IMG/VR virus record: IMGVR_UViG_3300048591_000147
Span: 248,001 to 312,000 of that record
Length of the DNA: 64,000 nt
Direction: 5' to 3' (one strand)
Shown here: positions 4,687 through 56,644 of the stretch, in pieces
How the letters are laid out: the number at the start of each line of letters is the position of its first letter
Numbering within the stretch: position 1 is the stretch's first letter
The notes under the pieces: generated by a model
What the model saw: the letters and a program-made list of their open reading frames with translations, nothing else
Told to the model about the DNA's origin: nothing
Database searches by the model: none
Translations under genes and position numbers: made by a program

Positions 4687-5670
4687 ATGACCGCAGAAAT
4701 AGATATAGAAGATTATAAATCACAATACAATGAAAGAGAATGGGCGATAGCAAAACCATTGTTAAGTAACGCTTATAGAAGTGTTACTGGTACGTATACA
4801 ATATTAAACAACTACCCATCAGTTAAATTAGATACTGTATTAAGATTGACAAATGCCACGATTAAAAAACTATTATTCTTTACAAATATTGTCGGCATAC
4901 AATCAATGCAGGGTCCAGTTGGCCTTATATATCTTATGGATTATTATTCCAAACCCAATGCCATGCAATTGAAATCAAGCGCGGTCGAGGCTAAATCACG
5001 AAAAATGAGAGCGGGCTGGTATATCGAAGCAGTACAAGATGCTAAAGCTCTTCATGGACAATCAACCGAGGCGGTATTCGAAGACGCACTCGCACAAGAA
5101 ATTATCGTAGAGTATACCGATATGATCTTGGAATCACTAAGAAATGCAGCGTTTAGAACATTAGGCGCTGATATCGCACATATGTCAGTTGAAAATATAA
5201 CACGTAGAATTAAATTAGAGTCTTCGTATATTCAAAACAAAGCAAGCTTTAAGAAAGGTAACTATACAATTTTGTCCAGTAAAAATTTTAAGTTACTATT
5301 TCCAGACGTTGTATTAGCTAAATCTGATATGGGAATTTTGGATAGCGGCATGACCATCGATAATGATGATACGGATATAAAAGTTTATGTGTCGGATTTT
5401 ATGGAAGATGATGTGTTAGTTGGTTTGAATGATTCTAATGGTAATACTGATGTCGGTTTTGTTTTATGTCCATATGTATTATTGCTGTGTAATATTGTAT
5501 GTAAACCTGACACGATGGAGCCGTATATGTCTATTACTACTAGATATCGTATGGAATGTACAAAAGAACGCGCAGAAAGATATTACACGGTATTTCGATT
5601 GGGTGAAAGGGTAGTGGAGCCAATAGTTGAACGATTGTTTGAAAATGATGATATGTATAAATTGATGTAA
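4687..5670 (+). CDS. Major-capsid (gp23/gp24)-like paralog
   Basis: IVGIQSMQGPVGLIY, VEAKSRKMRAGWYIEAVQD, LAQEI and GFVLCPYV...TRY match gp23-family motifs. Confidence 0.8.
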   Translation: MTAEIDIEDYKSQYNEREWAIAKPLLSNAYRSVTGTYTILNNYPSVKLDTVLRLTNATIKKLLFFTNIVGIQSMQGPVGLIYLMDYYSKPNAMQLKSSAVEAKSRKMRAGWYIEAVQDAKALHGQSTEAVFEDALAQEIIVEYTDMILESLRNAAFRTLGADIAHMSVENITRRIKLESSYIQNKASFKKGNYTILSSKNFKLLFPDVVLAKSDMGILDSGMTIDNDDTDIKVYVSDFMEDDVLVGLNDSNGNTDVGFVLCPYVLLLCNIVCKPDTMEPYMSITTRYRMECTKERAERYYTVFRLGERVVEPIVERLFENDDMYKLM

Positions 5671-5715
5671 CAATGTAAGTGGAACACCATTAAAATCCCA
5701 TCATATATAATTTAT

Positions 5716-5976
5716 ATGATGGGATTTTTTATGAAAAAAATAAAACAAGTTGACGACAAATTACAAAAAGAGAAAGCAGAAAAAGAGCGAATTGAGAAGT
5801 TACAGCGAGAGCATGCCGAGAAATTACAAAAAGAATATGCAGCAAAAGTAGCAGCACAAAAGAAATGGCTAGACTCTTTAGAATATCCGCACGAGATACA
5901 TAATCCGGCGTCTTCGCAGGAAGATTTTTTTGTTAGTTACTGGAAAGAAAATAACAACAGGATTATTGAGAGATGA
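5716..5976 (+). CDS. Hypothetical coiled-coil protein
   Basis: 86-aa ORF overlapping the TerL start (ATGA). Confidence 0.55.
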   Translation: MMGFFMKKIKQVDDKLQKEKAEKERIEKLQREHAEKLQKEYAAKVAAQKKWLDSLEYPHEIHNPASSQEDFFVSYWKENNNRIIER

Positions 5977-7535
5977 GTAGGAGAGTTTATGGCATTAAAA
6001 AGGCCAATGAGCCAGTTGCGTATGATGTCGATAAGGCAAGAGAACTTGCCAAGTGTGCTAGAGATCCAATATATTTCATCAAGAATTATGTAAAAACACA
6101 ACACCCTATATTGGGGTTCTTACCATTTAAGCTTTATGATTATCAGGAAGAAATGATAAGAAGTTTTATGACCAATACCAAGCTGATCGTTCGTTCTGGG
6201 CGACAAACTGGTAAGACGGTTACGGTATGTTCATACTTATTATGGTTCGCAATGTTTAATGAGCACAAGACGGTGTTATGTGTCTCTAAGGACGCGGATG
6301 CCGCTAAAGTAATTGTCAATCTTATCCAAAAAATGTATCTGGAAGTGCCAGACTTTTTAAAGTGTGGTGTCGCAGATGATGACTGGAACAAACACACTGC
6401 CAAATTCGACAATGGCTCTATGATAGTTTCATTAGCTACATCAGAAACTGCTGGTCGTGGTCGCTCAATAAGTCTGTTATATGCTGACGAAATAGCATTC
6501 GTTAGACCGGCAATCCAAGAACTATTTTGGACATCAATTCAGCCGACACTATCCACGGGCGGATCATGTATTGTGACTTCTACCCCTAATGGTGATACAG
6601 ATTTATTTTCTAAATTGTGGAGGGGCGCAGAGCTTGGAGCAAATGATTTCAAATATATCTATGTGCCATGGAATTCACCACCCGGTCGTGATGATGAATT
6701 CAAGCGCAAAGAAATAGCAAATATTGGCGAGCGCAAATGGCGTCAGGAGTATGAGTGTGAATTCATTACATCTGAAGGTACATTGGTCGATGATTTGATT
6801 ATTAAGAATTTGAAGAAAATTGTAGAAGACAAAGTACCCGTAATGGAGATTGCTGGCGAAAAGCTATGGGTGAATATAAATCCAAGAAGATCATATATTA
6901 TCGCATGTGACCCCGGTACTGGCACAGGACTGGATAATTCTGCAATTCAAGTAGTCGAATTTCCAACGATGGTCCAAGTATTAGAAAGCGCTACCAATAC
7001 ATTAGATTCTGCGACAGTCTATTCTAAGATTAAGAATATCGCAAGGTACATTACATCGTTCGGTGCGGATGTATTCTTTTGCTTTGAGCAGAACGGTGTT
7101 GGTGAAGGTATTGCCGCGTTATATACGACAGATGAACAGCCAATTGAAGCCGTATTATTAACATCACAGACTGGTAAAGACGGTAAGAAGCGATTAGGAT
7201 ATGTGACTGACATAAGGAACAAAGTGAAATTCTGTTTAAGACTGAAGAAAGTTATTGAGTCAGAGATTCTCAAAATAAACTCAGTAGACTTTTTGGTCGA
7301 ACTTCAGCGCTTCGTTAGAGATGGGCATACATATTCAGCACAGCCGGGTGCCACGGACGATAGAATCATGGCAATGATATTGGTTCTGAGAGCGGTAGAG
7401 CAAATGGCAGAATATGATGAGAACGCATACACGATATGCTATTCATTCCATAACGAACAACAAGAAGACTGGAATGGCTTTCATAATAAACCGGAAGAAG
7501 AAGACGATTTATTACCATTACCAATGTTCGGGTAA
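5973..7535 (+). CDS. 17: Terminase large subunit (gp17-like)
   Basis: GRQTGKT Walker A, LYADEIAF Walker B, TSTPNG, IACDPGTG RNase H motif, DDRIMA. Confidence 0.95.
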   Translation: MSRRVYGIKKANEPVAYDVDKARELAKCARDPIYFIKNYVKTQHPILGFLPFKLYDYQEEMIRSFMTNTKLIVRSGRQTGKTVTVCSYLLWFAMFNEHKTVLCVSKDADAAKVIVNLIQKMYLEVPDFLKCGVADDDWNKHTAKFDNGSMIVSLATSETAGRGRSISLLYADEIAFVRPAIQELFWTSIQPTLSTGGSCIVTSTPNGDTDLFSKLWRGAELGANDFKYIYVPWNSPPGRDDEFKRKEIANIGERKWRQEYECEFITSEGTLVDDLIIKNLKKIVEDKVPVMEIAGEKLWVNINPRRSYIIACDPGTGTGLDNSAIQVVEFPTMVQVLESATNTLDSATVYSKIKNIARYITSFGADVFFCFEQNGVGEGIAALYTTDEQPIEAVLLTSQTGKDGKKRLGYVTDIRNKVKFCLRLKKVIESEILKINSVDFLVELQRFVRDGHTYSAQPGATDDRIMAMILVLRAVEQMAEYDENAYTICYSFHNEQQEDWNGFHNKPEEEDDLLPLPMFG

Positions 7536-27666: not shown

Positions 27667-28575
27667 ATGAATAATTTACAAGAACTACAGAAGTTGGCGG
27701 GTATTGATATAACAGAATCATTACGTAGGACTTCGGAAAAAATCAAGGGGTTAGATGGCCCGTTTAATACCAATAAGCGTAGAGGGTTGTACTTCGATCC
27801 AAAAGAAAATCGTTTCTATGATAGAAATAGCGACCATTACGTTGACTTGGTTGATGGCGAGGACGATCCACGTAAGGCACAAGTTAAAACAATAACAGAT
27901 GCTAAGAATATTGACGAGGAAGTAGAAGTCAAAGAAGCTGTAGATGCGCCTAGATTCGACCACGCAGCATATAAGGCAAAGGTTCGTACTATGTCAGATG
28001 ATGCATTGCGATTCACTATGAAAGATGCACATGAAGCTATTAAGGCAAATCCAGATAGTGAGAAGGCCAAATCAGGGTATTATGCTGATGAGATTAATTA
28101 TTGTTCAGATGAACTACATAGACGTAAGACGACCAACGAATCAACAACACCAGAAAAGGTAGGCTTACTATTTGATCCCAATGACTTTGTCAAGCAGATG
28201 GAGAAGACCTTTAGGGATAGTGTGGAGTCAATATCTTATCATCACACAGATGCTGATGCTGACCGCGCAGATAAGTACAAGTTACCTAAAGATGTCAAAA
28301 AGGCATGTACTGAAAGAATAGCAGAGCTTAAAGCGGCTATTGACGTTGAAGATGATAAAGGTTATAATGATAAGAGCATTAAAGAGCAGGCAATTGAATG
28401 TATAGAACAGATTCTTCAGAATCTTTCTTCTAATGACGCAGAAGGCTTCAAACAGTCCGTCATATATTTGGACACCTTAATGTCTATATTGGTAGATTTG
28501 ATGCCTGCGCAGTTACTAAAATATTTGAGAGTAGGTAGAAATTATGGCAAAGATCCTTCCACCGAACCCGTGTGA
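27667..28575 (+). CDS. Hypothetical protein, possible head/internal protein
   Basis: CATAAATA late promoter at 27641; starts MNNLQELQKLAGIDITE. Confidence 0.65.
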   Translation: MNNLQELQKLAGIDITESLRRTSEKIKGLDGPFNTNKRRGLYFDPKENRFYDRNSDHYVDLVDGEDDPRKAQVKTITDAKNIDEEVEVKEAVDAPRFDHAAYKAKVRTMSDDALRFTMKDAHEAIKANPDSEKAKSGYYADEINYCSDELHRRKTTNESTTPEKVGLLFDPNDFVKQMEKTFRDSVESISYHHTDADADRADKYKLPKDVKKACTERIAELKAAIDVEDDKGYNDKSIKEQAIECIEQILQNLSSNDAEGFKQSVIYLDTLMSILVDLMPAQLLKYLRVGRNYGKDPSTEPV

Positions 28576-28581
28576 TCACAC

Positions 28582-28749
28582 ATGATAATATGCGTCTGTG
28601 AGGGTTTATCCTCAGACCAGATAGTAAAAATCATAAAAACCTCGTCTTCTATAGACGAGGTTTTTTGCTCTGGGGCTGGCACATGGTGTGGTTGCTGTAG
28701 AGGCACGATCCATGCTATGATTGAGGATCACAATAAAGATTTGAGTTAA
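28582..28749 (+). CDS. bfd: Bacterioferritin-associated ferredoxin (Bfd-like [2Fe-2S]), 55 aa, not in ORF track
   Basis: MIICVCEGLSSDQI...GAGTWCGCCR gives CxC-x29-CxxC. Confidence 0.85.
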   Translation: MIICVCEGLSSDQIVKIIKTSSSIDEVFCSGAGTWCGCCRGTIHAMIEDHNKDLS

Positions 28750-28752
28750 ATT

Positions 28753-29373
28753 ATGATAGAATACCCTTCGATTAGAAACACTGGAAAGTATAAAAGAATT
28801 CCAGTTATGTTGTTTGATAAAGTGGATGGGTCTAACATCCGCGCAAAGTGGACTCGTAAAGGTGGGTTCAAAACGTTTGGAACGCGAACACAGTTAGTCA
28901 ATGAAGACACTCCGTTTTGGGGTGACGTGATCACGCTCTTTAATGAAAGTTTAGCTGATAAATTGAACACCTATTTTAGTAAACTGAAGGCAGATAAACT
29001 GATAGTTTTTGGAGAGTTCTATGGCCATAACTCATTTGCTGGAAGACACGTCGATGAGGCGCATAGTATTGTACCATTTGACGTATATGACGAAAAAATA
29101 AAAGCGTTTATGCCTCCAGAGAAGTTCTACAACGAATTAGGCTCTATAGTTACCATTCCTAAAGTATGGGAGACTAATGTAGAGTTAAATGCTGAACTGA
29201 TTCAAAGTGTTAGATGCGGCTACTATGGGGTATTTGAGGGTGTCATCTGTAAGGGTTTACACCGTGATGGTTCCTTCTCTGGTGGTGTACCAATGTATAA
29301 AATTAAAACAACATCTTACCTTCAGAAATTAAAAGAAACATTCAAACATGACTGGGAGCGATACGCAGAATGA
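28753..29373 (+). CDS. RNA ligase-like nucleotidyltransferase
   Basis: KVDGSN motif I, FGEFYG, PFDV, EGVIC, YKIK. Confidence 0.8.
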   Translation: MIEYPSIRNTGKYKRIPVMLFDKVDGSNIRAKWTRKGGFKTFGTRTQLVNEDTPFWGDVITLFNESLADKLNTYFSKLKADKLIVFGEFYGHNSFAGRHVDEAHSIVPFDVYDEKIKAFMPPEKFYNELGSIVTIPKVWETNVELNAELIQSVRCGYYGVFEGVICKGLHRDGSFSGGVPMYKIKTTSYLQKLKETFKHDWERYAE

Positions 29374-29540
29374 AAACATACGCAGAGTATACATTTAGAA
29401 TATTACTGTTGGCAGTTTGGATTGCTGGAATTGTATTGGCCAAGGGTTTCTGGTCAACATTTTTTGCAATATTTTTTGCACCATATTCATGGTATCTTGT
29501 GATGGAGAGGGTGCTGACCATGAACGGGATCATTACTTGA
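29370..29540 (+). CDS. Small membrane protein (56 aa, not in ORF track)
   Basis: WIAGIVLAKGFWSTFFAIFFAPYSWYLV, two hydrophobic segments. Confidence 0.65.
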   Translation: MKTYAEYTFRILLLAVWIAGIVLAKGFWSTFFAIFFAPYSWYLVMERVLTMNGIIT

Positions 29541-29593
29541 CGATCACGCGAAATCGTGGGATCATATGTCATCAAATTAAAGGTTATACGAAC

Positions 29594-29848
29594 ATGACTG
29601 ACGCAGAACAGATGGAAAAGGTCTTAGTGGAGATGAGTAAGGGCTGGAAAAAATTTCTAGAGTCCTTCAATTCTTTTAAAAATCAAGAAATTTCAGAGGC
29701 TGCATTTCTGCTACAAGCATCATGCATAATTATGAACAATACCTATCTCTTCACTGATACGAGTGATGAGCCAACGGATATTATAGATCATCTTCCACCA
29801 GCACTTGAGATGGAAGTTAGTGATATGTTGGATGACGGAGCACTCTAA
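29594..29848 (+). CDS. Hypothetical protein
   Basis: Start moved to 29594 (AAGG RBS); the longer track ORF overlaps the membrane gene. Confidence 0.6.
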   Translation: MTDAEQMEKVLVEMSKGWKKFLESFNSFKNQEISEAAFLLQASCIIMNNTYLFTDTSDEPTDIIDHLPPALEMEVSDMLDDGAL

Positions 29849-30486
29849 TGGCTAATCTACCTGAAATCATTCGCAATGTTGATGGGTTATATGAAGGTGA
29901 TTTAAGACATTATTTTAAAGTGGTTCTAGAGTGTGCAAAAAACCTTAAGAATCCATACCATAATTTCCGTCACATGTTTCATGTAACGTGGTTGTGTTAT
30001 GATGCGTGTATCCATTATAACGAAGTCTTATCACCTAAACAAATGCGTAGATTGCTGATAGCCGCTATGTTCCATGACTTCGATCATGCTGGTAGAAGTG
30101 GAAATGACGATCTGAATATAGAAATCGCGATCAGAGGATTGAGAAAATACGCTCATCCTCAAGATGCCGATGATCTTGATGAGATTGAAAAATTGATTAG
30201 AACTACACAATTTCCGCATATCATCGCGGCGGATAAATTGAGTCTTTTGGGTGCTATCCTACGAGATGCCGACCTCAGTCAGGGCCTAAGTCCTGTGTGG
30301 GTGCAGGAAATCATCTTTGGGCTTTCGTCTGAAATGTGCGTTGATCCAATCGATGTATTCAAGATGCAGGCTGGATTCTTTTCGAATTTGAAGTTCCTGA
30401 CCGATTGGGCGCAACTCAAATTTCCAGAGTCCTTGGTGAAAGACAAGATTAAAGAAGCTCAGGATTATTTGGAGATTATCGGATGA
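29848..30486 (+). CDS. HD-fold phosphohydrolase resembling class I cyclic-nucleotide phosphodiesterase
   Basis: NPYHNFRH, FHDFDHAG, LIRTT, DADLS, QAGFF. Confidence 0.75.
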   Translation: MANLPEIIRNVDGLYEGDLRHYFKVVLECAKNLKNPYHNFRHMFHVTWLCYDACIHYNEVLSPKQMRRLLIAAMFHDFDHAGRSGNDDLNIEIAIRGLRKYAHPQDADDLDEIEKLIRTTQFPHIIAADKLSLLGAILRDADLSQGLSPVWVQEIIFGLSSEMCVDPIDVFKMQAGFFSNLKFLTDWAQLKFPESLVKDKIKEAQDYLEIIG

Positions 30487-30887
30487 ATGACGCATCAAAC
30501 ATGATTGGAAATTATGTAGCAGTTGTACACACTGCGAAACAATTGTTCAAATATAAGTTATATGAATGTGTGAGGATAGATCTGCTGGGGGATAAAAAGG
30601 AATCTTTGTACGTAATGCATGTGGCTCAACCAGAGTCAGATGCCTATGTATCAGTTCGCATATCGAGATATACAGGATATGTGAGTCCAGATACCAATAA
30701 GTTAGAAACAACACTGTATCCACATCTTGTGGCGCTCTTATCTCCATCTGAGATGTTAGGCGCGTATGATGAATACGGTTTCTCTAAAGAGGAAATACCA
30801 TTGATACTACAGCAGTTGACTGATACCGCATCCAGACAGATAGCCAAAACAGAGATTTTAGAAACTGAAGGCATTGTGTATATATGA
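30483..30887 (+). CDS. Hypothetical protein
   Basis: 134-aa ORF, ATGA overlaps on both sides. Confidence 0.6.
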   Translation: MNDASNMIGNYVAVVHTAKQLFKYKLYECVRIDLLGDKKESLYVMHVAQPESDAYVSVRISRYTGYVSPDTNKLETTLYPHLVALLSPSEMLGAYDEYGFSKEEIPLILQQLTDTASRQIAKTEILETEGIVYI

Positions 30888-31306
30888 AGCACACAACTTA
30901 TAACGTAATTTTGAAAGAAGCTGGCGTAAAGGATAGATTCGGAAGAATGTACCCACTTGACGAGTTGCAGAAGCTGTGCGATCATATAAACGAGAATACA
31001 CCGTTTGGCAAGATAGGCGCTGATGACGCAGGGGCGGCAGGAATAGAGTTAGAGAAAGTATCGCATTCGATAACAAACGCAATCATAAAAGATAACAAAT
31101 TGATGGTAACACTGAAAGTGCTACCCACACCACAGGGTGAGATTTTGTTAGATAAATTGAACAATTATGAAGAACGATCTGGTAATGGTGGACTTCTTGA
31201 TCGTGATCATGTTATGATGAATGGTGTTGGACATGTAGATGGTGATGGTACGGTAAAAAACTATTCATTACTTTCAATAAATGTAAAAGCTGATTTAGAA
31301 TCATAA
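30884..31306 (+). CDS. Degenerate prohead protease (gp21)-like protein
   Basis: AGVKDRFGRMYP...LEKVSHSIT...KVLPTPQGEIL; the catalytic His and Ser motifs are absent. Confidence 0.65.
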   Translation: MKHTTYNVILKEAGVKDRFGRMYPLDELQKLCDHINENTPFGKIGADDAGAAGIELEKVSHSITNAIIKDNKLMVTLKVLPTPQGEILLDKLNNYEERSGNGGLLDRDHVMMNGVGHVDGDGTVKNYSLLSINVKADLES

Positions 31307-31315
31307 ATAGATGTA

Positions 31316-31341
31316 CTGACCGATAGGAGTTATCGTCATGA
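31316..31341 (+). repeat. SD-in-loop hairpin leader, copy A
   Basis: CTGACCGATAGGAGTTATCGTCATGA. Confidence 0.8.
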
Positions 31342-32411
31342 GTAAAAATAATCAATACAATTACGCAGTATATATTGGAAGGTTTCAACCCTTTCACTTA
31401 GGTCACCTGAACACCATCAAGTCTGCACTGGAAATAAGTAAAAAGCTTATTGTAGTTCTCGGTTCAGCAAATTCCCCACGTACAATCAAATCACCATTCA
31501 CGGTCAACGAAAGAATCGAAATGATTCAGGCATGTCTGACTGGCGAAGAGTGTGATAAAATCACCTTCACTTCCGTAGAAGATCAGCTTTACAACAATGC
31601 TAATTGGGCTGCTTCGGTTTTAAAGACCGTTGGAGAGATCACAAATGGCGATACCTCAATCACATTACTTGGCGCGAAGAAAGATCAGAAGACAGAATCC
31701 TATATAAATTTCTTTAAGCAATGGGACTATACGGAAACAGCAATTCTGAATTCTGCTGGTGGGAAAAATATCGATGCAACAAAAGTTAGAGAATTGTATT
31801 TCTGCGGACACTTACAGTTTGTCAAATCTGCCGTGCCAGATGGAGTATATAATTTCTTAGAAAAGTTCCAAACTAAAGCAGAGTTCCACCCATTGTGCGC
31901 ACAGTACGATGATGCGGTAAACTACGATAAGAAGTTTGCGTCTTTTCCAAAAGAGTATTCATTGAATTTCGTCACCGTTGATGCGATTGTCGTTCAATCT
32001 GGGCATATTCTATTAATCAAGAGAAAGAAGAATCCGGGTAAAGACCTCTGGGCAGTGGTTGGCGGGCATGTTAATCCAGATGAAACACTGGAAGACGCTA
32101 TGATCAGAGAACTTAGAGAAGAGACTGGAATTAAAGTTCCAGAAAAAGTGTTAAGAGGATCGATTGTAGATCGTAAGATATTTGATCATCCTGATCGTTC
32201 ATTGCGTGGAAGGGTATTCATCAAAAACGGTAGAACTATTACTAGTTCTTATTGTATTAAATTAGATGATAACAATGACCTCCCCCGTGTTAGTGGATTG
32301 GACGATGCCGCTGATGCACATTGGTTCACTTTCTCTGAAGTAAGAAATATGAGAAATAAGTTGTTTGAGGATCACTACGATCAAATCTTGTACTTCCTCA
32401 ATCGGTTGTAA
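31338..32411 (+). CDS. nadM: Bifunctional NMN adenylyltransferase / ADP-ribose pyrophosphatase (NadM-Nudix)
   Basis: GRFQPFHLGH; Nudix box GGHVNPDETLEDAMIRELREETG; DDAADA. Confidence 0.95.
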   Translation: MSKNNQYNYAVYIGRFQPFHLGHLNTIKSALEISKKLIVVLGSANSPRTIKSPFTVNERIEMIQACLTGEECDKITFTSVEDQLYNNANWAASVLKTVGEITNGDTSITLLGAKKDQKTESYINFFKQWDYTETAILNSAGGKNIDATKVRELYFCGHLQFVKSAVPDGVYNFLEKFQTKAEFHPLCAQYDDAVNYDKKFASFPKEYSLNFVTVDAIVVQSGHILLIKRKKNPGKDLWAVVGGHVNPDETLEDAMIRELREETGIKVPEKVLRGSIVDRKIFDHPDRSLRGRVFIKNGRTITSSYCIKLDDNNDLPRVSGLDDAADAHWFTFSEVRNMRNKLFEDHYDQILYFLNRL

Positions 32412-32419
32412 AATAAAGT

Positions 32420-32445
32420 CTGACACATAGGAGTTATGGTCATGA
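32420..32445 (+). repeat. SD-in-loop hairpin leader, copy B
   Basis: CTGACACATAGGAGTTATGGTCATGA, identical to 34556-34581. Confidence 0.9.
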
Positions 32446-32789
32446 AAACATTGCAAGAAATTAAAGAAACTGTTAGTCAAATCCAATTTTCTAATTGGGA
32501 ATTCATCGTAAAAGAAAAGAACGATGTGCCGTATCTACAAATACAGTTCATGGGCGCCTGTAATAACACAGGGGACGTCGAGAGACAGTATTGTAGGAAG
32601 TGGCAACTGTCTTACTACATGGTAACCTCAGAGATCGTTAGAACAGCGTACAAGGCGGTTCTAGCCGCTGTCGAGCATGAGGCTAGTGAGAACTTTTATT
32701 ACAAGAGTGCTAGAATATTCGATCCGCATGTAGATGTTGAAGCGCTTGTGGAAGTTTCAAAGTCTGGTAGAATAGAAACTAGAAACTAA
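32442..32789 (+). CDS. Hypothetical phage protein
   Basis: RKWQLSYYM...SEIVRTAYKAV...EHE pattern; start set by SD spacing. Confidence 0.7.
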   Translation: MKTLQEIKETVSQIQFSNWEFIVKEKNDVPYLQIQFMGACNNTGDVERQYCRKWQLSYYMVTSEIVRTAYKAVLAAVEHEASENFYYKSARIFDPHVDVEALVEVSKSGRIETRN

Positions 32790-32829: not shown

Positions 32830-33354
32830 TCATTTCACGATGAGCGGATGATCATCTTCTGTACATCCACCGTGTAATGTCTTTGCTTGATGACAATTGG
32901 CGCATAACAACTGTAGGTTGTCTGGGAAATTATTTTTAAACGCCCATGGATAAATGGAGCCTTTTCTATGATTATTATTAAATAATTCTTTTCGGTGCTG
33001 TGCACCATCGTTATCTACATGATCCAACTGCAAATATTTATGATTGTTTTGCCCGCAACAGGCACACTTATTACCATAACCATTTAGGCATGCTTGTCTC
33101 AAATTTTGATAATTTTGTTTTTGTTTTTTACCGTGTTTATACAAGCATGAGGCGCACATGGACTTTGTGTCTTCTTTAGGATTTATTAAACAATACCTAC
33201 AAATACCATTGGCGATAGCTTTATTTTTGGATTTTTCTTGATATGCTAAATGTGCTTTATGACAAGTACTACATCTGGTCTTTCCGATATCCCTTTCATT
33301 ACCACATCTAACACATTTCCCCAATTCTTTATATTTTTTATATAATTTATCCAT
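32830..33354 (-). mobile_element. Free-standing HNH homing endonuclease
   Basis: N-terminal CxxC repeats; CACCG...LQLDHVDN...LLCANCH. GGGAGA RBS and GATAAATA late promoter at 33373-33380. Confidence 0.85.
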
Positions 33355-33454
33355 AATATTTCTCCCATACATTATTTATCATGTGGTGAAAAATATTTGA
33401 AACAGTTGATATGATGTGATATGATGTATCATCATATTTAATTAGGTTCTTATT

Positions 33455-34087
33455 ATGAACAACGAATATAAAAAATATCCTCGAACTTTTCACCTACCTT
33501 GGAGTGAAGGTGCAACTAATGATGATAAAATATTAAAAAACGCTGCGCATTTCGAACAGAAGCGAATTATAGTATCTGTCAAGTATGACGGTGAAAATTT
33601 TTCTGGATATTATGATTACATGCATGCGCGTAGTATAGATTCTAAGCATCACCCTAGTAGGGATTGGATCAAAAAGTTTTGGTCAGAGAGGCAAAAAGAT
33701 CTTCCTATTGGATTTCGACTGTGCGGAGAGAATTTGTTTGCAAAGCATTCAATCGAATATAACGATTTGGAATCGTATTTTTATGGTTTCTCCATGTGGG
33801 ATGAGAGTAATACTTGTCTTTCTTGGGACGAGACTGTAGAATGGTTTCAGTTGCTCGGCGTCACCCCGGTGAAAGTTCTGTATGATGGTATCTATGATGA
33901 AAAACTTATCAAACAGTTGTTCGTGAATGACGGGACGATGGAAGGCTACGTGGTAAGACTGGCAGATGCTTTTCGCTATGAAGATTTTGCACAATCTGTA
34001 GCAAAATTCGTTCGTAAGGACCATGTAACTACGGGTACACACTGGATGCACGAAGAAATGGTGTCTAATAAACTAATGCGAGCATAA
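33455..34087 (+). CDS. RNA ligase family protein
   Basis: KYPRTFHLPWS, KYDGEN motif I, CGENL, EGYVVR, KFVR. Confidence 0.85.
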   Translation: MNNEYKKYPRTFHLPWSEGATNDDKILKNAAHFEQKRIIVSVKYDGENFSGYYDYMHARSIDSKHHPSRDWIKKFWSERQKDLPIGFRLCGENLFAKHSIEYNDLESYFYGFSMWDESNTCLSWDETVEWFQLLGVTPVKVLYDGIYDEKLIKQLFVNDGTMEGYVVRLADAFRYEDFAQSVAKFVRKDHVTTGTHWMHEEMVSNKLMRA

Positions 34088-34555: not shown

Positions 34556-34581
34556 CTGACACATAGGAGTTATGGTCATGA
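34556..34581 (+). repeat. SD-in-loop hairpin leader, copy C
   Basis: CTGACACATAGGAGTTATGGTCATGA. Confidence 0.9.
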
Positions 34582-35984
34582 CAAATCTAAGAAACAATCT
34601 TATCCTCAATCTCGTGGATAGTTACAAAACCAGCCACTTTGGCTTTATGGAAACTGGCACCACAGAAATCTTCTCTTACATTGAGAGTCGCGCTGGTAGC
34701 GAGTACAAAGAAACATTATTCTTCGGTCTTCAGTATTTCTTAAAGGAATATATGCAGACTCCAATCACCATGGAAATGGTGGATCAGGCAGAAAAATTCC
34801 TAACAGCACATGGCGAACCGTTCAATAGAACGGGTTGGGAATATATCGTTAACAACCTTAAGGGTAAAATCCCACTTCAAGTCCGCGCAGTGCCAGAAGG
34901 CACCATTGTAACTGAAGGCAACGTATTAGTTACCTTTGTGAACACTGATCCCAATTGTGCGTGGGTTACCGGATATTTCGAAACAGCGTTTCTTCGCGCG
35001 GTGTGGTATCCGTCCACCGTTGCTACTCGTTCGTTTAATATTAAGCGAACCATTAGCAGTTATCTACAGCGCACCGGTTCTATTGAATCTCTACCATTCA
35101 AGATGATTGACTTTGGTGCACGAGGCGTTTCCAGCCTTGAATCAAGCATGCTAGGTGGTGCTGCGCATTTAGTTAATTTCTTAGGTACTGATAATATTTC
35201 GGGCATCATTTGTTCGATGGATTATTATTATTCCAAGGAAGTTACAGGATTTTCTATCCCTGCGAGTGAGCACAGTGTTACAACAGCATGGGGCAAGAAT
35301 CGGGAAGCAGATTTCTTTTCAAATGCCATTGACGTATATGGTGGTCCCGGAAAACTAATCTCATTGGTTGCAGACTCTTATAGTTTGGAAAACGCCATTA
35401 AAATTATTGGTACAACCTTAAAACAGAAGATTATTGATAATGGGTGCACTATCGTTGTTCGCCCTGATTCTGGTGATCCTGCCAGTATGGTGCTGGTTAC
35501 TGTTAGATTGTTGGACCAGTATTTTGGCTGTAATAAGAATGCTGCTGGATATAACGTGCTGCACAACTCGGTCAGAGTTATTCAAGGTGACGGAATCACC
35601 ATTGAATCCATTAAGGAAATTTTAGATCTTCTGGAAAAGAATGGATACAGTGCCGATAACGTTACTTTCGGATGTGGTGGCTATTTGCTCCAGCAATTGA
35701 ATCGTGATACACAACGATTTGCCATGAAAGCATCCTCAGTCGTAGTTGGTGGTGATCGCAGAAATATTTGTAAGACGCCTAAGACTGATATGTCCAAGCA
35801 GTCTAAATCTGGTCGCTTGGCATATGTCAAATTTATCGGTCAAGATATTAAGCGTACCATTACTGTCGAACAGTTTGATCCAACCATCCACGAAGATTTG
35901 ATGGAAACTGTTTACAGAGATGGTGAGATTTTGAAAGTGTATACGTTTGACGAAGTTAGGGCGAATGCAACCAAGAGTTTATAA
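34578..35984 (+). CDS. nadV: Nicotinamide phosphoribosyltransferase (Nampt/NadV)
   Basis: DSYKTSH, IDFGARG, PASEHS, SLVADSY, VVRPDSGD, IQGDG, GCGG. Confidence 0.95.
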   Translation: MTNLRNNLILNLVDSYKTSHFGFMETGTTEIFSYIESRAGSEYKETLFFGLQYFLKEYMQTPITMEMVDQAEKFLTAHGEPFNRTGWEYIVNNLKGKIPLQVRAVPEGTIVTEGNVLVTFVNTDPNCAWVTGYFETAFLRAVWYPSTVATRSFNIKRTISSYLQRTGSIESLPFKMIDFGARGVSSLESSMLGGAAHLVNFLGTDNISGIICSMDYYYSKEVTGFSIPASEHSVTTAWGKNREADFFSNAIDVYGGPGKLISLVADSYSLENAIKIIGTTLKQKIIDNGCTIVVRPDSGDPASMVLVTVRLLDQYFGCNKNAAGYNVLHNSVRVIQGDGITIESIKEILDLLEKNGYSADNVTFGCGGYLLQQLNRDTQRFAMKASSVVVGGDRRNICKTPKTDMSKQSKSGRLAYVKFIGQDIKRTITVEQFDPTIHEDLMETVYRDGEILKVYTFDEVRANATKSL

Positions 35985-43894: not shown

Positions 43895-44361
43895 TGTTCG
43901 AAGATGAATGGAACAAAAGATTCTTAAGAATGGCACTGTACGTGCAGACATGGTCTAAGGACGATTCCACCAAAGTTGCGGCAATCATAGTTGACTCTAA
44001 TAAGATTGTTAGAGCAACTGGTTACAATGGCATTCCAAGGTTGTTGGATGACAACAACCGACTCAGACATGAGCGACCAGAAAAGTACAAATGGTTCAGT
44101 CATGCCGAAGAGAATTTGTTCTGCAATTGTGCTAGACTAGGTGTCTCTACAAATGATTGTACTATTTTTATAACAGCATGCCCTTGCAACACATGTACCA
44201 GAATGATCATACAGTCTGGAATTACAAACGTAGTATTTTTAGAAAATAAAGAATTTGAAACACGATGGGCTGACGCTATCAAGACGACTAAAGAGATGTT
44301 AGAAGAAGCGTCTATTCCAATCACTAAATACGAATATGAGCAATTATATGAAAATCAATGA
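43894..44361 (+). CDS. dCMP deaminase
   Basis: SKDDSTKVAA, GYNG, HAEEN, PCNTC. Confidence 0.92.
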   Translation: MFEDEWNKRFLRMALYVQTWSKDDSTKVAAIIVDSNKIVRATGYNGIPRLLDDNNRLRHERPEKYKWFSHAEENLFCNCARLGVSTNDCTIFITACPCNTCTRMIIQSGITNVVFLENKEFETRWADAIKTTKEMLEEASIPITKYEYEQLYENQ

Positions 44362-44848
44362 ATTACAAAATAAACAGCAGCCGGTCATCTATGTGTTGGT
44401 TGGCGCTCCATGCAGCGGAAAGAGCACATGGACTAAGAAATTGCTTGCAACAGACTCGTCGTTTGTAGTAATATCAACTGATGATCTATTAGACGAATAC
44501 GCAGAAGCCGAAGGCTTGACTTATGGTGAAGCTTGGAATAAATACTTCGGTAGGGCTAATTCAGCAGCGAAGCAGAAGTTTGCATCTGCTGTCACTAATA
44601 AGTCAAACATGGTTTACGATCAGACGAACATGAGTGCTAAGAAACGTAGGGGCATCTTGTCAAACGTTCCTGATCACTTCAAGGTCGCAGTTGTATTCGA
44701 TGTTGATACAAAAGAATTGTTTCGTAGAAACAAGGAACGTGCGGAAAAAACGGGGAAGAACATTCCAGAACATATCATTAAAAAGATGCTAGGGGATTAT
44801 CATCCTGTAACTAAGGAAGAGGGCTTCAATAAAATCATAAGGGTGTAG
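44348..44848 (+). CDS. Polynucleotide kinase-like P-loop kinase (AAA_33)
   Basis: LVGAPCSGKSTW, STDD, YDQTN...R. Confidence 0.8.
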   Translation: MKINELQNKQQPVIYVLVGAPCSGKSTWTKKLLATDSSFVVISTDDLLDEYAEAEGLTYGEAWNKYFGRANSAAKQKFASAVTNKSNMVYDQTNMSAKKRRGILSNVPDHFKVAVVFDVDTKELFRRNKERAEKTGKNIPEHIIKKMLGDYHPVTKEEGFNKIIRV

Positions 44849-48670: not shown

Positions 48671-49366
48671 ATGAGAATAGTAGCTACTAGTGACACCCAC
48701 TTTCCGGTGAAACCCGGAATGATCCCCTTCGGTGACGTTTTTTTGCATTGCGGTGATCTTATGCAGAATGGGTATCCGTCAGAATGGCCAGATTGTTTAG
48801 ACTGGTTAAATGAATTACCACATAAGGTAAAAATAATTACATTTGGAAATCATGATTTCCATCCATTCCTATATCCCGGACCATCGTTACAAGATTTAAG
48901 AAAGATTGGAGTAACCGTATTAGGATATCCGGGCAATTCACATTATTATGCAATGACATTACCCAATAACATGGTGGTTGCAGCTTGCCCCTATGTTAAT
49001 AATTTACCAAGATGGGCATTTAATGCCAGTCGAGAGCAAGTAGTATATCATTTAGAACAGCTAACACGACTACAGATTGTGGATATAATGATGACTCATA
49101 TGCCAATATACGGAGTATTGGATACAGTGAATAATCGTCATACTGGTTCATTGGAATATCAAAGCTTTCTCATACGCCAACAACCTCCTATAAAATATTG
49201 GTTTTGCGGACATATTCACGAAGGCTACGGACATTACATTGATGATGAGCCATATGAGAAAAAGTTTCATAATCCATTTGGTCGCACTGGTTGCAATATC
49301 TACAATGTCGCCATGTGTAATAGATTACAACAGCATGTTAATAAGCCAGTAGTTATAGACGTTTAA
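48671..49366 (+). CDS. Calcineurin-like metallophosphoesterase
   Basis: SDTH, CGDL, GNHD, MTH, GHIHE. Confidence 0.9.
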   Translation: MRIVATSDTHFPVKPGMIPFGDVFLHCGDLMQNGYPSEWPDCLDWLNELPHKVKIITFGNHDFHPFLYPGPSLQDLRKIGVTVLGYPGNSHYYAMTLPNNMVVAACPYVNNLPRWAFNASREQVVYHLEQLTRLQIVDIMMTHMPIYGVLDTVNNRHTGSLEYQSFLIRQQPPIKYWFCGHIHEGYGHYIDDEPYEKKFHNPFGRTGCNIYNVAMCNRLQQHVNKPVVIDV

Positions 49367-56148: not shown

Positions 56149-56644
56149 GATCACACAACCGGCAAATCCTCCCAAGGGAACCTTTGTTGGTGTAAAATTA
56201 GACGCAGAATCTAAGCAAAAAATTCTGGATTTAATAGGTAAGTTAAAATTGGAGGAACCAATTCCTGAAGACAAGTTACACTCCACGCTAGTGTACTCCG
56301 ACAAGAAATCTTTGGATGGGTTTAAATCTAATACTAGTTTCGGTGAGAGTGGCTTTCCAAAGGTTAAGCCGGTCAACTTTAATGTCTTTCCAAATTCACA
56401 AAACCCCGGTACTGGATGTCTGGTCATGGAGTTGGATTCGGATTACTTACATACTAGACATGATGAAATTGTTTCGAAATATGATGTTCAAGAAAAATTT
56501 CCGACGTATCGCCCACATATAACACTTTCATACAATTATGCTGGTGAACCACCAGACAGTAAATATTTACAAGACCTTGGTGAATTGAATATTGAATCAG
56601 AGTATGATGAGCCCATAAACGATAACTTTGCTAAATCTTTATGA
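56135..56644 (+). CDS. acb1: Anti-CBASS nuclease Acb1-like 2H phosphodiesterase (T4 57B family)
   Basis: PIPEDKLHSTLVYS, LVMELDSDYL..RH, YRPHITLSYN and EYDEPI follow the T4 Acb1 pattern. Confidence 0.88.
   Translation: MKLNEITQPANPPKGTFVGVKLDAESKQKILDLIGKLKLEEPIPEDKLHSTLVYSDKKSLDGFKSNTSFGESGFPKVKPVNFNVFPNSQNPGTGCLVMELDSDYLHTRHDEIVSKYDVQEKFPTYRPHITLSYNYAGEPPDSKYLQDLGELNIESEYDEPINDNFAKSL

What the first reader, a model, noticed from the sequence alone, without database searches (positions are those of the whole stretch)
29848..30486. Stand-alone HD protein with the class I cNMP phosphodiesterase signature
Motifs align in order with class I PDEs: YHN..H, HDxDHxG..N, IL.T (here LIRTT), ADLS and the substrate-binding Gln (QAGFF vs QVGFI). 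Known phage anti-Pycsar and anti-CBASS nucleases use metallo-beta-lactamase or 2H folds. An HD/PDE-I type would be a distinct candidate for destroying cAMP/cGMP/cCMP/cUMP signals (inference).
Basis: partly seen in the sequence, partly recalled or inferred. Interest (0 to 1): 0.65.

Follow-up and report, generated by a model that had tools for sequence, protein, structure and literature searches.

The report
Compact PDE-like hydrolase of jumbo phage
A 212-residue protein of a 315-kb phage is a trimmed-down structural cousin of the enzymes that destroy cAMP/cGMP in animals. It belongs to a very large, mostly viral, never-tested family, so the idea that it erases bacterial alarm nucleotides is reasonable but unproven.

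Summary
The ORF (29848-30486, +, 212 aa) is real and lies in a complete 314,956-bp jumbo-phage genome. Its N-terminal third (NPYHNFRH...HDFDHAG) matches class I cyclic-nucleotide phosphodiesterases significantly: PF00233 scores 33 bits against a 24.8-bit cutoff, and all listed PDB sequence hits (best 60 of 102) are class I PDEs. A pLDDT-96 model superposes on PDE9A/7A/5A/4D catalytic domains over about 205 of 212 residues (Z 16-18), ahead of generic small HD hydrolases (Z 13-15.6).

The match is partial in four ways. Only profile positions 1-50 of 238 align. The C-terminal motifs (ADLS, QAGFF) are not significant by sequence. The strict PDE signature spacing fails. About 100 residues of the PDE domain are missing.

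The family is huge (6,305 cluster representatives), mostly viral, nearly always stand-alone, and rare in bacteria (1 of 201 genomes sampled from the carrier's phylum). The metal ligands, the YHN histidine, E162, an aromatic residue at 177 (98%) and Q174 (83%) are conserved.

Gene context varies and has no fixed partner: RNA ligases, Nampt/NMNAT-Nudix, NADAR and nucleotide-metabolism genes.

Verdict: a class I-PDE-like HD metallo-phosphodiesterase. cNMP hydrolysis is the best single guess (about 0.4). RNA 2',3'-cyclic-phosphate end healing and nucleotide or ADP-ribose metabolism remain live rivals. The anti-Pycsar/CBASS role is untested.

The parts
29848..30486 (+). Gene for the 212-aa compact class I-PDE-like HD phosphohydrolase (P0001)
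   Evidence: ORF and translation; PF00233 33 bits and HD 24 bits; PHROG 16069 'phosphohydrolase' 1e-25; AF2 pLDDT 96.3; PDE folds at Z 16-18
29956..29973 (+). Codons for Y37-H38-N39-F40-R41-H42. This is the class I PDE 'YHNxxH' motif: H38 is the putative general acid and H42 the first metal ligand.
   Evidence: Aligned to PDE9A FHNFRH and PDE5 YHNWRH by HMMER. In 151 representatives Y is 144/146, H38 145/146, H42 146/146
30073..30093 (+). Codons for H76-D77-F78-D79-H80-A81-G82, the HD metal-binding dyad plus the HDxxHxG extension
   Evidence: Aligned to PDE HDLDHPG. H76 and D77 are 151/151, H80 144/151, G82 129/151
30262..30279 (+). Codons for R139-D140-A141-D142-L143-S144. D142 is the putative last metal-binding Asp, corresponding to 'CDLS' of PDE5.
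   Evidence: Weak second HMMER stretch against PDE5; D142 is 147/149 and D140 139/149. Not significant by sequence alone
30367..30381 (+). Codons for Q174-A175-G176-F177-F178, the candidate base-recognising Gln and stacking aromatic residue on the helix 167-179
   Evidence: Q 121/146 (N 9, E 7); F 133/146 plus Y 8 and W 2. F177 is invariant and Q174 is replaced in 6 of 20 in the broad alignment. Equivalence to the PDE Q/F clamp is inferred from the full-length superposition and was not shown residue by residue
28753..29373 (+). RNA ligase paralogue A (PF09414), upstream in the same gene array
   Evidence: Pfam 2.3e-9; PHROG 548 RNA ligase. One or other RNA-ligase paralogue precedes the PDE gene in both arrangements of the clade
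29417..29848 (+). Small ORF of unknown function. Its start is uncertain; the relative L008 has 84 aa. Its stop overlaps the PDE start codon.
   Evidence: no Pfam or PHROG match
30483..30887 (+). 134-aa ORF of unknown function whose ATG overlaps the PDE stop (ATGA). It is conserved directly downstream in 4 of 5 clade members.
   Evidence: no Pfam or PHROG match
31338..32411 (+). NMN adenylyltransferase-Nudix fusion (NAD salvage)
   Evidence: CTP_transf_like plus NUDIX. The same pairing lies next to the PDE homologue in L013
33455..34087 (+). RNA ligase paralogue B (PF09414). In relatives L009/L010/L012 its orthologue abuts the PDE gene.
   Evidence: Pfam 2.5e-28; PHROG 24030
34572..35984 (+). 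Nicotinamide phosphoribosyltransferase (Nampt)
   Evidence: NAMPT_N plus NAPRTase. Also lies near the PDE homologues in L013, L016 and L113
44336..44848 (+). Stand-alone polynucleotide 5'-kinase-like P-loop kinase, with no phosphatase domain
   Evidence: AAA_33 2.2e-21. Best PDB hits are Pnkp1 1.7e-12, T4 Pnk 1e-5 and the CthPnkp kinase domain

Best explanation
The gene encodes a compact, stand-alone, divalent-metal-dependent phosphodiesterase of the HD superfamily. Its catalytic core is of the class I cyclic-nucleotide-PDE type.

Inferred mechanism: H42, H76, D77 and D142 hold a binuclear metal site. A metal-bound hydroxide attacks the phosphorus, and H38 of the YHN motif protonates the leaving ribose oxygen. 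The base of a mononucleotide-sized substrate stacks on F177 and is read by Q174.

The most likely substrate class is a cyclic mononucleotide (3',5'-cNMP giving 5'-NMP). The most likely use by the phage is to remove a host nucleotide signal during infection.

Shown here: the fold, the motif conservation and the distribution. Inferred: the chemistry, the substrate and the biological role.
For: - Sequence: PF00233 scores above its gathering threshold. All listed PDB sequence hits are class I PDEs, for the single sequence and for the family profile.
- Structure: the pLDDT-96 model matches 16 class I PDE catalytic domains first, Z 15.7-18.1 over 202-208 of 212 residues. Foldseek agrees. ESM-Atlas gives TM 0.82-0.83 over 209-212 residues to eukaryotic PDE4 and GAF-PDE clusters.
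- Conservation over 151 representatives clustered at 50% identity: Y37, H38, H42, H76, D77, H80, D87, D142 and E162 are 95% or more; position 177 is aromatic in 98%; Q174 is 83%.
- Atlas shape search: the nearest bacterial non-family clusters are HD domains fused to class III nucleotide cyclases (PF00211) and to the Pycsar effector TM domain PF18967.
- Distribution: phage-centred and sporadic in bacteria, 1 of 201 genomes sampled, as expected of an accessory or conflict gene.
- Context: neighbours in four independent phage lineages are counter-defence-type NAD genes, namely Nampt, NMNAT-Nudix and NADAR.
- One bacterial copy lies about 1.7 kb from a large protein containing a Guanylate_cyc domain.
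Against: - Only the first 50 of 238 PF00233 positions align. The C-terminal half has no sequence signal for PDEs.
- About 100 residues of the PDE catalytic domain, including parts that shape the substrate pocket, are absent, so the pocket cannot be assumed to be the same.
- The strict PDE signature spacing fails.
- Q174 is replaced in 17% of representatives and in 6 of 20 broad-family members.
- The cyclase and PycTM fusions could not be tied to this family by sequence.
- Five bacterial carriers have no class III cyclase, and only 1 of 5 has DAC or GGDEF.
- There is no PADLOC or NCBIfam assignment.
- The next-best folds are small HD hydrolases: YpgQ (by my recollection an NTP pyrophosphohydrolase) and two of unknown function, 2pq7 and YedJ, at Z 13-15.6.
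- In this clade the gene follows an RNA ligase.
Confidence: 0.4

Rival explanations
1. RNA end-healing enzyme. The HD protein opens RNA 2',3'-cyclic phosphate ends and/or removes 3'-phosphates left by host anticodon nucleases or other metal-independent RNases. The stand-alone polynucleotide kinase adds the 5'-phosphate, and the adjacent ATP-dependent RNA ligase reseals the RNA. This would be a split version of T4 Pnk/Rnl or of Runella HD-Pnk plus ligase.
For: - An RNA-ligase paralogue lies just upstream of the PDE gene in both rearranged versions of this clade. In L003/L009/L012 the genes abut: 5407-6000 and 6001-6639.
- RNA ligase is 2.6 kb upstream in L113, and a T4 Rnl1-type ligase is 3.3 kb upstream in an unrelated phage contig, L114.
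- The phage has a 170-aa Pnk-like kinase with no phosphatase domain: Pnkp1 1.7e-12, T4 Pnk 1e-5.
- The genome has no 2H, PNK3P or Tpt1.
- Precedent: Runella HD-Pnk has an HD 2',3'-phosphoesterase, and the ligase ORF overlaps the start of its ORF (PMC6097658).
Against: - Of 10 phage genomes carrying a homologue, only 3 have a PF09414 ligase above cutoff. The complete genomes of Lu11 and PaBG have none. Rnl1 and RtcB were not screened.
- The phage carries four metallophosphoesterases, two of them small ones in this window, that could do the healing as in CthPnkp/Pnkp1.
- None of about 65 bacterial loci has a recurrent ligase or kinase neighbour.
- The kinase's PHROG relatives have a different N-terminal domain, which P0001 does not match.
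- No HD-kinase fusion appears among the top 150 or the longer relatives.
- I could not compare with the Runella HD domain itself because the paper and sequence are not held.
Confidence: 0.2
2. Nucleotide-pool or salvage enzyme. It would be a small HD hydrolase acting on free nucleotides: 2',3'-cNMPs from RNA breakdown, (d)NTP pyrophosphohydrolysis as in YpgQ, or (d)NMP dephosphorylation. This would feed or reshape the pool for phage replication.
For: - The structural neighbours just below the PDEs are YpgQ (Z 14.4), 2pq7 (15.6) and YedJ (13.1).
- Neighbours in several lineages are nucleotide-metabolism genes: ThyX, dCMP deaminase, dCTP deaminase and Nudix in PaBG, dUTPase in Dickeya JA11, NT5C, and a HAD hydrolase and DNA polymerase in BcepSauron.
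- Bacterial carriers lack class III cyclases.
Against: - The YHN general-acid histidine and all sequence hits point to phosphodiester rather than pyrophosphate or monoester chemistry.
- PDEs outrank the small HD hydrolases in Z and in aligned length, about 205 against about 174 residues.
- No match to dNTPase or 5'-nucleotidase families beyond a PHROG hit at E 0.46.
- Rarity in bacteria, 1 of 201, is odd for a salvage enzyme.
Confidence: 0.2
3. Hydrolase for an NAD/ADP-ribose-derived molecule, such as a Thoeris-type cyclic ADPR isomer or ADP-ribose cyclic phosphate. It would work together with the phage NAD-salvage genes.
For: - Nampt and/or NMNAT-Nudix lie within 6 kb in the window's clade, in L013 (directly upstream), in L016 and in L113.
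- NADAR genes flank the homologue P0206, and one lies 3.8 kb downstream in L003.
- HD-like PDE domains that cut ADP-ribose phosphodiesters exist: SidE family, Z about 10.
Against: - 6 of 10 carrier phage genomes have no Nampt.
- No Tpt1 in this phage.
- SidE-type and Mesh1 folds rank far below class I PDEs.
- Clustering may simply reflect an accessory or counter-defence island.
Confidence: 0.1
4. Alarmone or cyclic-dinucleotide hydrolase, acting on (p)ppGpp, c-di-AMP, c-di-GMP or cGAMP.
For: - HD-fold enzymes do all of these. Small alarmone hydrolases and Mesh1 appear at Z 10-11 and HD-GYP at Z 8.6-9.
- RelA/SpoT synthetase is present in 4 of 5 bacterial carriers.
- A jumbo-phage survey predicts HD-GYP and HD-alarmone PDEs in such phages (PMC7824862).
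Against: - No sequence match to the Rel/SpoT hydrolase, HD-GYP or PgpH families.
- These folds rank well below the PDEs.
- The HDxxED and GYP motifs are absent from the sequence.
Confidence: 0.05

Closest known systems
Eukaryotic class I 3',5'-cyclic nucleotide phosphodiesterase catalytic domains (PF00233; e.g. PDE9A 2yy2, PDE7A 4pm0, PDE5A, PDE4D 1zkn, RhoPDE 5vyd, TbrPDEB1)
   Same: Shares the YHNxxH and HDxxHxG motifs, the four metal ligands, and the all-helical fold in the same helix order. About 205 of 212 residues superpose at 2.5-2.8 A (Z 16-18). A conserved Gln-x-x-aromatic pair sits on a late helix.
   Different: It has 212 aa and 11 helices, against about 320 aa for the PDE catalytic domains it superposes on. 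Only profile positions 1-50 of 238 align. The strict signature spacing is off by one residue. The C-terminal half is unrecognisable by sequence. It has no regulatory domains, and it is viral or prokaryotic rather than eukaryotic. No canonical full-length PF00233 domain was found in 401 sampled genomes of one bacterial phylum or in 14 control genomes.
PHROG 16069 'phosphohydrolase' of jumbo phages (PaBG gp057, Lu11 gp288, BcepSauron gp223, Dickeya JA11 gp287, the Erwinia Alexandravirus 322-aa protein, Lak megaphages)
   Same: Same family by sequence (1e-25; tblastn 25-35% identity) and by predicted fold (TM 0.74-0.85). Same invariant residues.
   Different: The window's protein belongs to a tighter subfamily that is 45-56% identical to copies in Patescibacteria MAGs. 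None of these proteins has been characterised; all annotations are generic.
Small stand-alone HD hydrolases YpgQ (5dqv), YedJ (3gw7) and 2pq7
   Same: Similar size (about 190-220 aa), HD metal site and helical core; Z 13.1-15.6.
   Different: Fewer residues align (172-174), there is no sequence match, and by my recollection they lack the YHN general-acid motif. YpgQ is, by my recollection, an NTP pyrophosphohydrolase rather than a cyclic-nucleotide PDE.
Runella slithyformis HD-Pnk (an HD 2',3'-phosphoesterase fused to a 5'-kinase, encoded next to a ligase)
   Same: An HD phosphoesterase encoded immediately after, and overlapping or abutting, a polynucleotide ligase ORF (PMC6097658). A Pnk-type kinase is present in the same phage.
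   Different: Here the HD protein and the kinase are separate genes 14 kb apart. No sequence comparison with the Runella HD domain was possible. No HD-kinase fusions were seen among relatives.
Phage signal-degrading nucleases Apyc1 (anti-Pycsar) and Acb1 (anti-CBASS) (PMC9117128; folds as stated in the finding)
   Same: These are the proposed functional analogues: small stand-alone phage enzymes that hydrolyse immune nucleotide signals.
   Different: Unrelated folds. Their activities are demonstrated, whereas nothing is demonstrated for this family. No HD-fold or class I-type counterpart was found in the literature searched.

Membership tests
Class I cNMP phosphodiesterase (Pfam PF00233 PDEase_I) | Whole-protein score above Pfam's gathering threshold | tested here: met
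   33.0 bits against 24.8, E 6.3e-8; 31.2 bits in the six-frame genome scan
Class I cNMP phosphodiesterase (Pfam PF00233 PDEase_I) | Match over the whole catalytic-domain profile (about 238 positions; domain of about 320 aa) | tested here: not met
   Only positions 1-50 align. The protein has 212 aa and 11 helices. The C-terminal profile finds no PDE. The same holds for all relatives.
Class I cNMP phosphodiesterase (Pfam PF00233 PDEase_I) | Signature HD[LIVMFY]xHx[AG]xx[NQ]x[LIVMFY] (pattern recalled from memory) | tested here: not met
   In HDFDHAGRSGND, N86 lies one residue too late. The strict pattern matches 1 of 151 family members; 23 of 151 match with one extra residue.
Class I cNMP phosphodiesterase (Pfam PF00233 PDEase_I) | YHNxxH with the general-acid His, plus the His/His-Asp/Asp metal ligands | tested here: met
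   Y37 H38 N39 H42, H76 D77 and D142 are conserved at 90% or more (N39) and 98% or more (the rest). The N-terminal ones align to PDE9A and PDE5. D142 aligns to PDE5 only weakly.
Class I cNMP phosphodiesterase (Pfam PF00233 PDEase_I) | Invariant substrate-binding Gln and stacking Phe ('glutamine switch / hydrophobic clamp') | tested here: inconclusive
   Q174 is 83%, with N/E 11%. Position 177 is aromatic in 98%. Q is replaced in 6 of 20 broad-family members. Spatial equivalence could not be verified because no residue-level superposition was available.
Class I cNMP phosphodiesterase (Pfam PF00233 PDEase_I) | Fold of the PDE catalytic domain | tested here: met
   The top 16 of 48,161 chains are class I PDEs, Z 15.7-18.1, 202-208 residues, rmsd 2.5-3.1 A. 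Foldseek TMq is 0.54-0.67. Atlas TM is 0.82-0.83. It is a trimmed version of the fold.
Class I cNMP phosphodiesterase (Pfam PF00233 PDEase_I) | Hydrolysis of 3',5'-cAMP/cGMP to 5'-NMP | not testable with these tools
   Needs an enzyme assay
HD superfamily metal-dependent phosphohydrolase (PF01966) | H...HD...D metal-binding pattern and a score above threshold | tested here: met
   24 bits against 22, residues 40-142. H42, H76, D77 and D142 are invariant or nearly so.
Phage anti-Pycsar / anti-CBASS signal nuclease (functional class) | Degrades the immune signal and rescues the phage from the defence system | not testable with these tools
   Only indirect hints: a phage-centred family, counter-defence neighbours, and a shape likeness to cyclase-HD and PycTM-HD proteins that was not confirmed by sequence.
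HD-type RNA end-healing 2',3'-phosphoesterase (HD-Pnk-like) | Genetic coupling to a polynucleotide ligase and a 5'-kinase | tested here: inconclusive
   The ligase is adjacent in this clade and the kinase is 14 kb away. But a ligase is present above cutoff in only 3 of 10 carrier phages, and there is no conserved neighbour in the bacterial loci.
HD-type RNA end-healing 2',3'-phosphoesterase (HD-Pnk-like) | Sequence relationship to the HD domain of Runella HD-Pnk | not tested

The most novel reading that the evidence does not exclude
This is the first example of a large, phage-borne family of minimal class I-type PDEs that erase cyclic mononucleotide immune or regulatory signals (for example Pycsar cCMP/cUMP, or host cAMP/cGMP). 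It would be a third, HD-fold solution alongside the two known anti-Pycsar and anti-CBASS nuclease folds. The same family would also represent the prokaryotic/viral minimal form of the catalytic domain that eukaryotes elaborated into PDE1-11.
Probability: 0.2. Interest if true: 0.8.

Novelty: new variant of a known kind. Interest (0 to 1): 0.55.

Why it matters
Class I PDEs are textbook eukaryotic enzymes and major drug targets. A 212-residue version that keeps the catalytic core would define the minimal PDE fold. It would also offer a prokaryotic/viral relative for tracing the origin of that fold.

For phage biology, the family is very large (6,305 cluster representatives at 50% identity), is typical of jumbo and megaphages, and has no characterised member. 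Assigning its substrate would annotate thousands of 'phosphohydrolase' genes at once.

If the substrate is a cNMP immune signal, this would be a new enzyme class of counter-defence. If it is RNA 2',3'>p ends, it would complete a split RNA-repair pathway. Either outcome can be tested directly with one purified protein.

Tried and rejected
1. Residue-level mapping of D142, Q174 and F177 onto PDEs failed by every route.
 - A C-terminal-half profile against PDB gave only chance hits.
 - PDB sequences cannot be retrieved by id.
 - No full-length PF00233 bridge protein exists among relatives or in 401 sampled genomes of one phylum.
2. Conserved operon partner in bacteria: none. The most frequent neighbour family occurs in 7 of about 65 loci.
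3. 'CPR housekeeping enzyme' is rejected. The gene occurs in 1 of 201 sampled genomes of that phylum.
4. 'Only possible 3'-healing enzyme of the phage' is rejected. There are four metallophosphoesterases.
5. A Tpt1-linked ADPR>p idea has no support: no Tpt1 in the genome.
6. Fusion architectures as a functional clue gave nothing.
 - The exhaustive profile search listed almost only stand-alone proteins in its top 150.
 - The longer proteins have no second Pfam domain.
 - A length-shifted word search found 12 longer relatives, none fused.
 - A search with L087 returned only itself.
7. The link to the cyclase-HD and PycTM-HD clusters was not confirmed by sequence. The Atlas feature search gives stand-alone HD and Npun_R2479 clusters instead. 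Scans of two phyla with the broad profile found only weak 'YHNVEH' proteins of about 290 aa, or nothing.
8. NCBIfam and PADLOC gave no assignment.
9. Cultured jumbo-phage contexts (Lu11, BcepSauron, Erwinia, PaBG, Dickeya, Aeromonas) consist mostly of hypothetical proteins.
10. Expression could not be shown. Four wastewater runs hold 34-43% of the sampled words, in one study. In the two that were laid, short contigs lie on the stretch. The libraries are labelled cDNA but are probably DNA, so this is no evidence of transcription.
11. `complex prediction` was not used, because no binding claim is made.
Full report
**What is there.** Window 29848-30486 (+) is an intact ORF of 212 codons. It has a GGAG about 8 nt upstream. 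Its ATG overlaps the stop of the preceding small ORF (TAATG), and its TGA overlaps the ATG of the next ORF (ATGA). The window is bases 248001-312000 of a complete 314,956-bp virus record with direct terminal repeats, so this is a jumbo phage. A T4-type large terminase and a UvsW-like helicase lie in the same window. No alternative genetic code was needed or used.

**Check of the observation.** The N-terminal motifs are real and significant.
- PF00233 (PDEase_I) scores 33 bits against a gathering score of 24.8. The generic HD family scores 24 against 22.
- phmmer against all PDB sequences gave 102 matches. The 60 listed are all class I PDEs (PDE9A, 10A, 5A, trypanosomal PDEB1), at E about 4e-5, aligning NPYHNFRH...HDFDHAG.
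- A 52-sequence family profile improves this to 9e-8. It adds a weak second stretch that places RDADLS on the PDE5 'ACDLS' metal-aspartate motif.

Three things limit the claim. The Pfam alignment covers only profile positions 1-50 of 238. A profile of residues 100-212 alone finds no PDE. The strict signature spacing, as I recall it, is missed by one residue and matches only 1 of 151 family members.

**Fold.** AlphaFold2 on the family alignment gives pLDDT 96.3 and pTM 0.92, with eleven helices. An exhaustive structural scan of 48,161 PDB representatives puts sixteen class I PDE catalytic domains first: Z 15.7-18.1, 202-208 of 212 residues aligned, rmsd 2.5-3.1 A. After them come a Thermotogales HD hydrolase of unknown function (2pq7, Z 15.6, 172 residues), yeast PDE2, YpgQ (14.4) and YedJ (13.1). 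Alarmone hydrolases, SAMHD1, SidE-PDE and HD-GYP are at Z 11.3 or below. Foldseek agrees. The ESM-Atlas shape search gives TM 0.82-0.83 over 209-212 residues to vertebrate PDE clusters. The protein is thus a trimmed class I-PDE-like core, about 100 residues shorter than the canonical domain.

**Family and conservation.**
- The word search found 377 relatives. The best 120 listed are 207-268 aa, and 99 of the 120 carry the PF00233 flag.
- The exhaustive profile search found 6,305 cluster representatives at E up to 1e-3, 2,055 at 1e-10 and 469 at 1e-30. The top 150 are almost all stand-alone proteins, and the aligned set of 151 has a median length of 218 aa.
- The few longer proteins carry no second Pfam domain.
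- Conservation across 151 representatives:

| Residue | Count |
|---|---|
| Y37 | 144/146 |
| H38 | 145/146 |
| H42 | 146/146 |
| H76, D77 | 151/151 |
| H80 | 144/151 |
| D87 | 149/151 |
| T120 | 146/151 |
| D142 | 147/149 |
| E162 | 145/148 |
| position 177 aromatic | 143/146 |
| Q174 | 121/146 |

- With jumbo-phage homologues at 23-35% identity included, Y37, H38, H42, H76, D77, H80, D142, E162 and F177 stay invariant, while Q174 is replaced in 6 of 20.
- The set H42/H76/D77/D142 (metal ligands), H38 (YHN general acid) and Q174-x-x-F177 is what a PDE-type active site needs. Assigning Q174 and F177 to the PDE clamp is still an inference.

**Distribution.**
- tblastn finds homologues in 85 phage records, by first word of the organism name: Erwinia 40, Prevotella (Lak megaphages) 15, Dickeya 8, Burkholderia 5, Aeromonas 5, Pseudomonas 4. 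Where named, they are 'phosphohydrolase'. PHROG 16069 matches at 1e-25.
- The nearest Atlas clusters are 60-100% viral, and BFVD gives the same picture.
- In one-genome-per-species bacteria there are 72 loci, mostly Patescibacteria MAGs at 45-56% identity. Yet only the reference genome itself, of 201 sampled from that phylum, carries the gene. It is a rare accessory gene, not a housekeeping one.
- In a quick ML tree the window's clade (5 viral rows, support 99) is nested in the Patescibacteria-type subfamily, sister to a Paceibacterota copy. More divergent phage copies branch outside (quick method, long branches flagged).
- No canonical full-length PF00233 domain was seen in 401 sampled genomes of one phylum or in the 14 controls.
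- NCBIfam and PADLOC have no model for it.

**Context.**
- In about 65 bacterial loci no neighbour family recurs in more than 7.
- Five bacterial carriers have no class III cyclase (0/5). DAC is 1/5, GGDEF 1/5, CYTH 3/5 and RelA/SpoT 4/5.
- One bacterial copy lies about 1.7 kb from a giant protein with a Guanylate_cyc domain.
- In this phage the gene sits in a tight same-strand array: BFD-like ferredoxin, RNA ligase A, small ORF, PDE, two unknown ORFs, NMNAT-Nudix, then (after an HNH gene on the other strand) RNA ligase B and Nampt.
- In 75-80%-identical relatives the block is rearranged, yet one or the other RNA-ligase paralogue still precedes the PDE gene, abutting it in L003/L009/L012. In L113 the ligase is 2.6 kb away, with IS-like genes between.
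- A T4 Rnl1-type ligase lies 3.3 kb upstream in an unrelated phage contig.
- NAD-related genes recur in independent lineages: NMNAT-Nudix and Nampt directly upstream in L013 (PDE 38% identical), a Nampt fragment in L016, and NADAR on both sides of P0206.
- Nucleotide-metabolism genes also recur: ThyX, dCMP and dCTP deaminases, dUTPase, NT5C.
- Coupling is not obligatory. Of 10 carrier phage genomes, 3 have a PF09414 ligase above cutoff and 4 have Nampt. Lu11 and PaBG have neither.

**RNA-repair rival.** The phage encodes a 170-aa kinase whose best solved relatives are Pnkp1 (1.7e-12), T4 Pnk (1e-5) and the CthPnkp kinase domain. It has no phosphatase domain. The genome has no 2H, PNK3P or Tpt1. 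Runella HD-Pnk is a precedent for an HD 2',3'-phosphoesterase encoded right after a ligase (PMC6097658). Against this, four metallophosphoesterases are present, two of them small ones in this window. No HD-kinase fusions occur in the family, and many carriers lack the ligase.

**Lead from shape.** After its own family, the nearest Atlas clusters are Bacteroidota proteins that combine a class III cyclase with an HD domain (TM 0.77) and proteins that combine the Pycsar effector TM domain PF18967 with an HD domain (TM 0.77). If those HD domains are true relatives, they tie this fold to cNMP signalling and to Pycsar. I could not confirm that by sequence and could not reach Bacteroidota genomes with the handles I had.

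**Literature.** A comparative survey of jumbo phages predicts HD-GYP and HD-alarmone PDEs, among six PDE families, but does not describe a class I-like one (PMC7824862). The searches found no HD-fold or class I-type anti-Pycsar or anti-CBASS enzyme. 'NAD-salvage islands' with Nampt and NMNAT-Nudix are described in freshwater Flavobacterium jumbophages (PMC13573597).

**Reads.** Four runs of one wastewater study hold 34-43% of the sampled words of 28700-32500. In the two runs laid, short contigs at 90-100% identity lie on the stretch. The libraries are labelled cDNA but are probably DNA, so no expression claim is made.

**Conclusion.** It is near certain (about 0.85) that this is a functional metal-dependent phosphodiesterase with a class I-PDE-type core. 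It belongs to a very large, phage-centred, uncharacterised family. Its substrate is open. My estimates:

| Substrate or role | Probability |
|---|---|
| 3',5'-cNMP | about 0.4, with a specific anti-Pycsar/immune-signal role about 0.2 |
| RNA 2',3'>p end healing | about 0.2 |
| Free-nucleotide metabolism, including 2',3'-cNMP | about 0.2 |
| ADP-ribose-derived molecules | about 0.1 |
| Alarmones or cyclic dinucleotides | about 0.05 |

It should not be filed as a bona fide PF00233 family member, because full-domain coverage and the signature spacing fail. It works like, and is the closest known relative of, class I PDEs. I rate it a new variant of a known kind, of moderate-to-good interest, and cheap to test.

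Noticed in passing
window 31338-32411 and 34572-35984: An NMNAT-Nudix fusion and a Nampt lie 2 kb apart, forming a two-enzyme NAD+ salvage pair of the kind reported to counter NAD-depleting defence. The same pair sits next to the PDE homologue in an unrelated phage contig (L013:3097-6596).
   Followed up: partly
window 28753-29373, 33455-34087, 44336-44848, 48671-49366, 56641-57381: A split RNA-repair toolkit: two PF09414 RNA ligases, a stand-alone Pnk-like 5'-kinase without a phosphatase domain, and two small lambda-phosphatase-type metallophosphoesterases. The genome has no 2H, PNK3P or Tpt1.
   Followed up: partly
window 32830-33372 (-); L003:2297-3142 (-): Opposite-strand HNH (window) and GIY-YIG/NUMOD3 (relative) endonuclease genes sit inside this block. 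Gene order differs between 75-80%-identical relatives (NMNAT-Nudix is downstream of the PDE gene here and upstream in L009/L012). This suggests shuffling of the accessory island driven by homing endonucleases.
   Followed up: no
window 28582-28749: A 55-aa BFD-like [2Fe-2S] ferredoxin ORF (PF04324, 30 bits) lies just upstream of RNA ligase A, behind the best sigma-70-like promoter match of the region (28340-28368, 11 of 12).
   Followed up: no
L018-L086 (bacterial loci) versus window 29848-30486: The jumbo-phage copy is 45-56% identical to copies in Patescibacteria MAGs and is nested among them in the tree, although only 1 of 201 sampled genomes of that phylum has the gene. This points to gene exchange between large phages and CPR bacteria, or is a hint about the phage's host.
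   Followed up: partly
L036, L045, L085 (also L046, L050): Nearly identical PDE copies (branch lengths 0.03-0.06) sit in MAGs labelled Alphaproteobacteria, Verrucomicrobiota and Acidobacteriota. This suggests mis-binned contigs or a mobile element or phage shared between bins.
   Followed up: no
L096, L098, L099, L101, L103, L104 (cyanobacterial genomes): Weak matches to the family profile occur in 26 of 301 sampled cyanobacterial genomes. The six proteins examined are about 290-310 aa and carry a 'YHNVEH' motif with sub-threshold or no PF00233 match. They may belong to the uncharacterised Npun_R2479 HD family. This is another prokaryotic lineage with the PDE half-signature.
   Followed up: partly
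ESM-Atlas clusters (rows 4-7): Bacteroidota proteins combine an HD domain of this shape with a class III nucleotide cyclase, with the Pycsar TM effector domain (PF18967), or (in Lentisphaerota) with a subtilase. These are possible cNMP-centred conflict systems that use an HD domain where Pycsar has a cNMP-binding domain.
   Followed up: partly
window 30483-30887: A 134-aa ORF with no known family is translationally coupled to the PDE gene (ATGA overlap) and is conserved directly downstream in 4 of 5 clade members. It could be a partner or regulator.
   Followed up: no
window 28700-32500 in runs X1-X4: The region, or close relatives at 90-100% identity, is present in wastewater metagenome libraries from a single study. 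That gives an environmental source for this phage lineage.
   Followed up: partly
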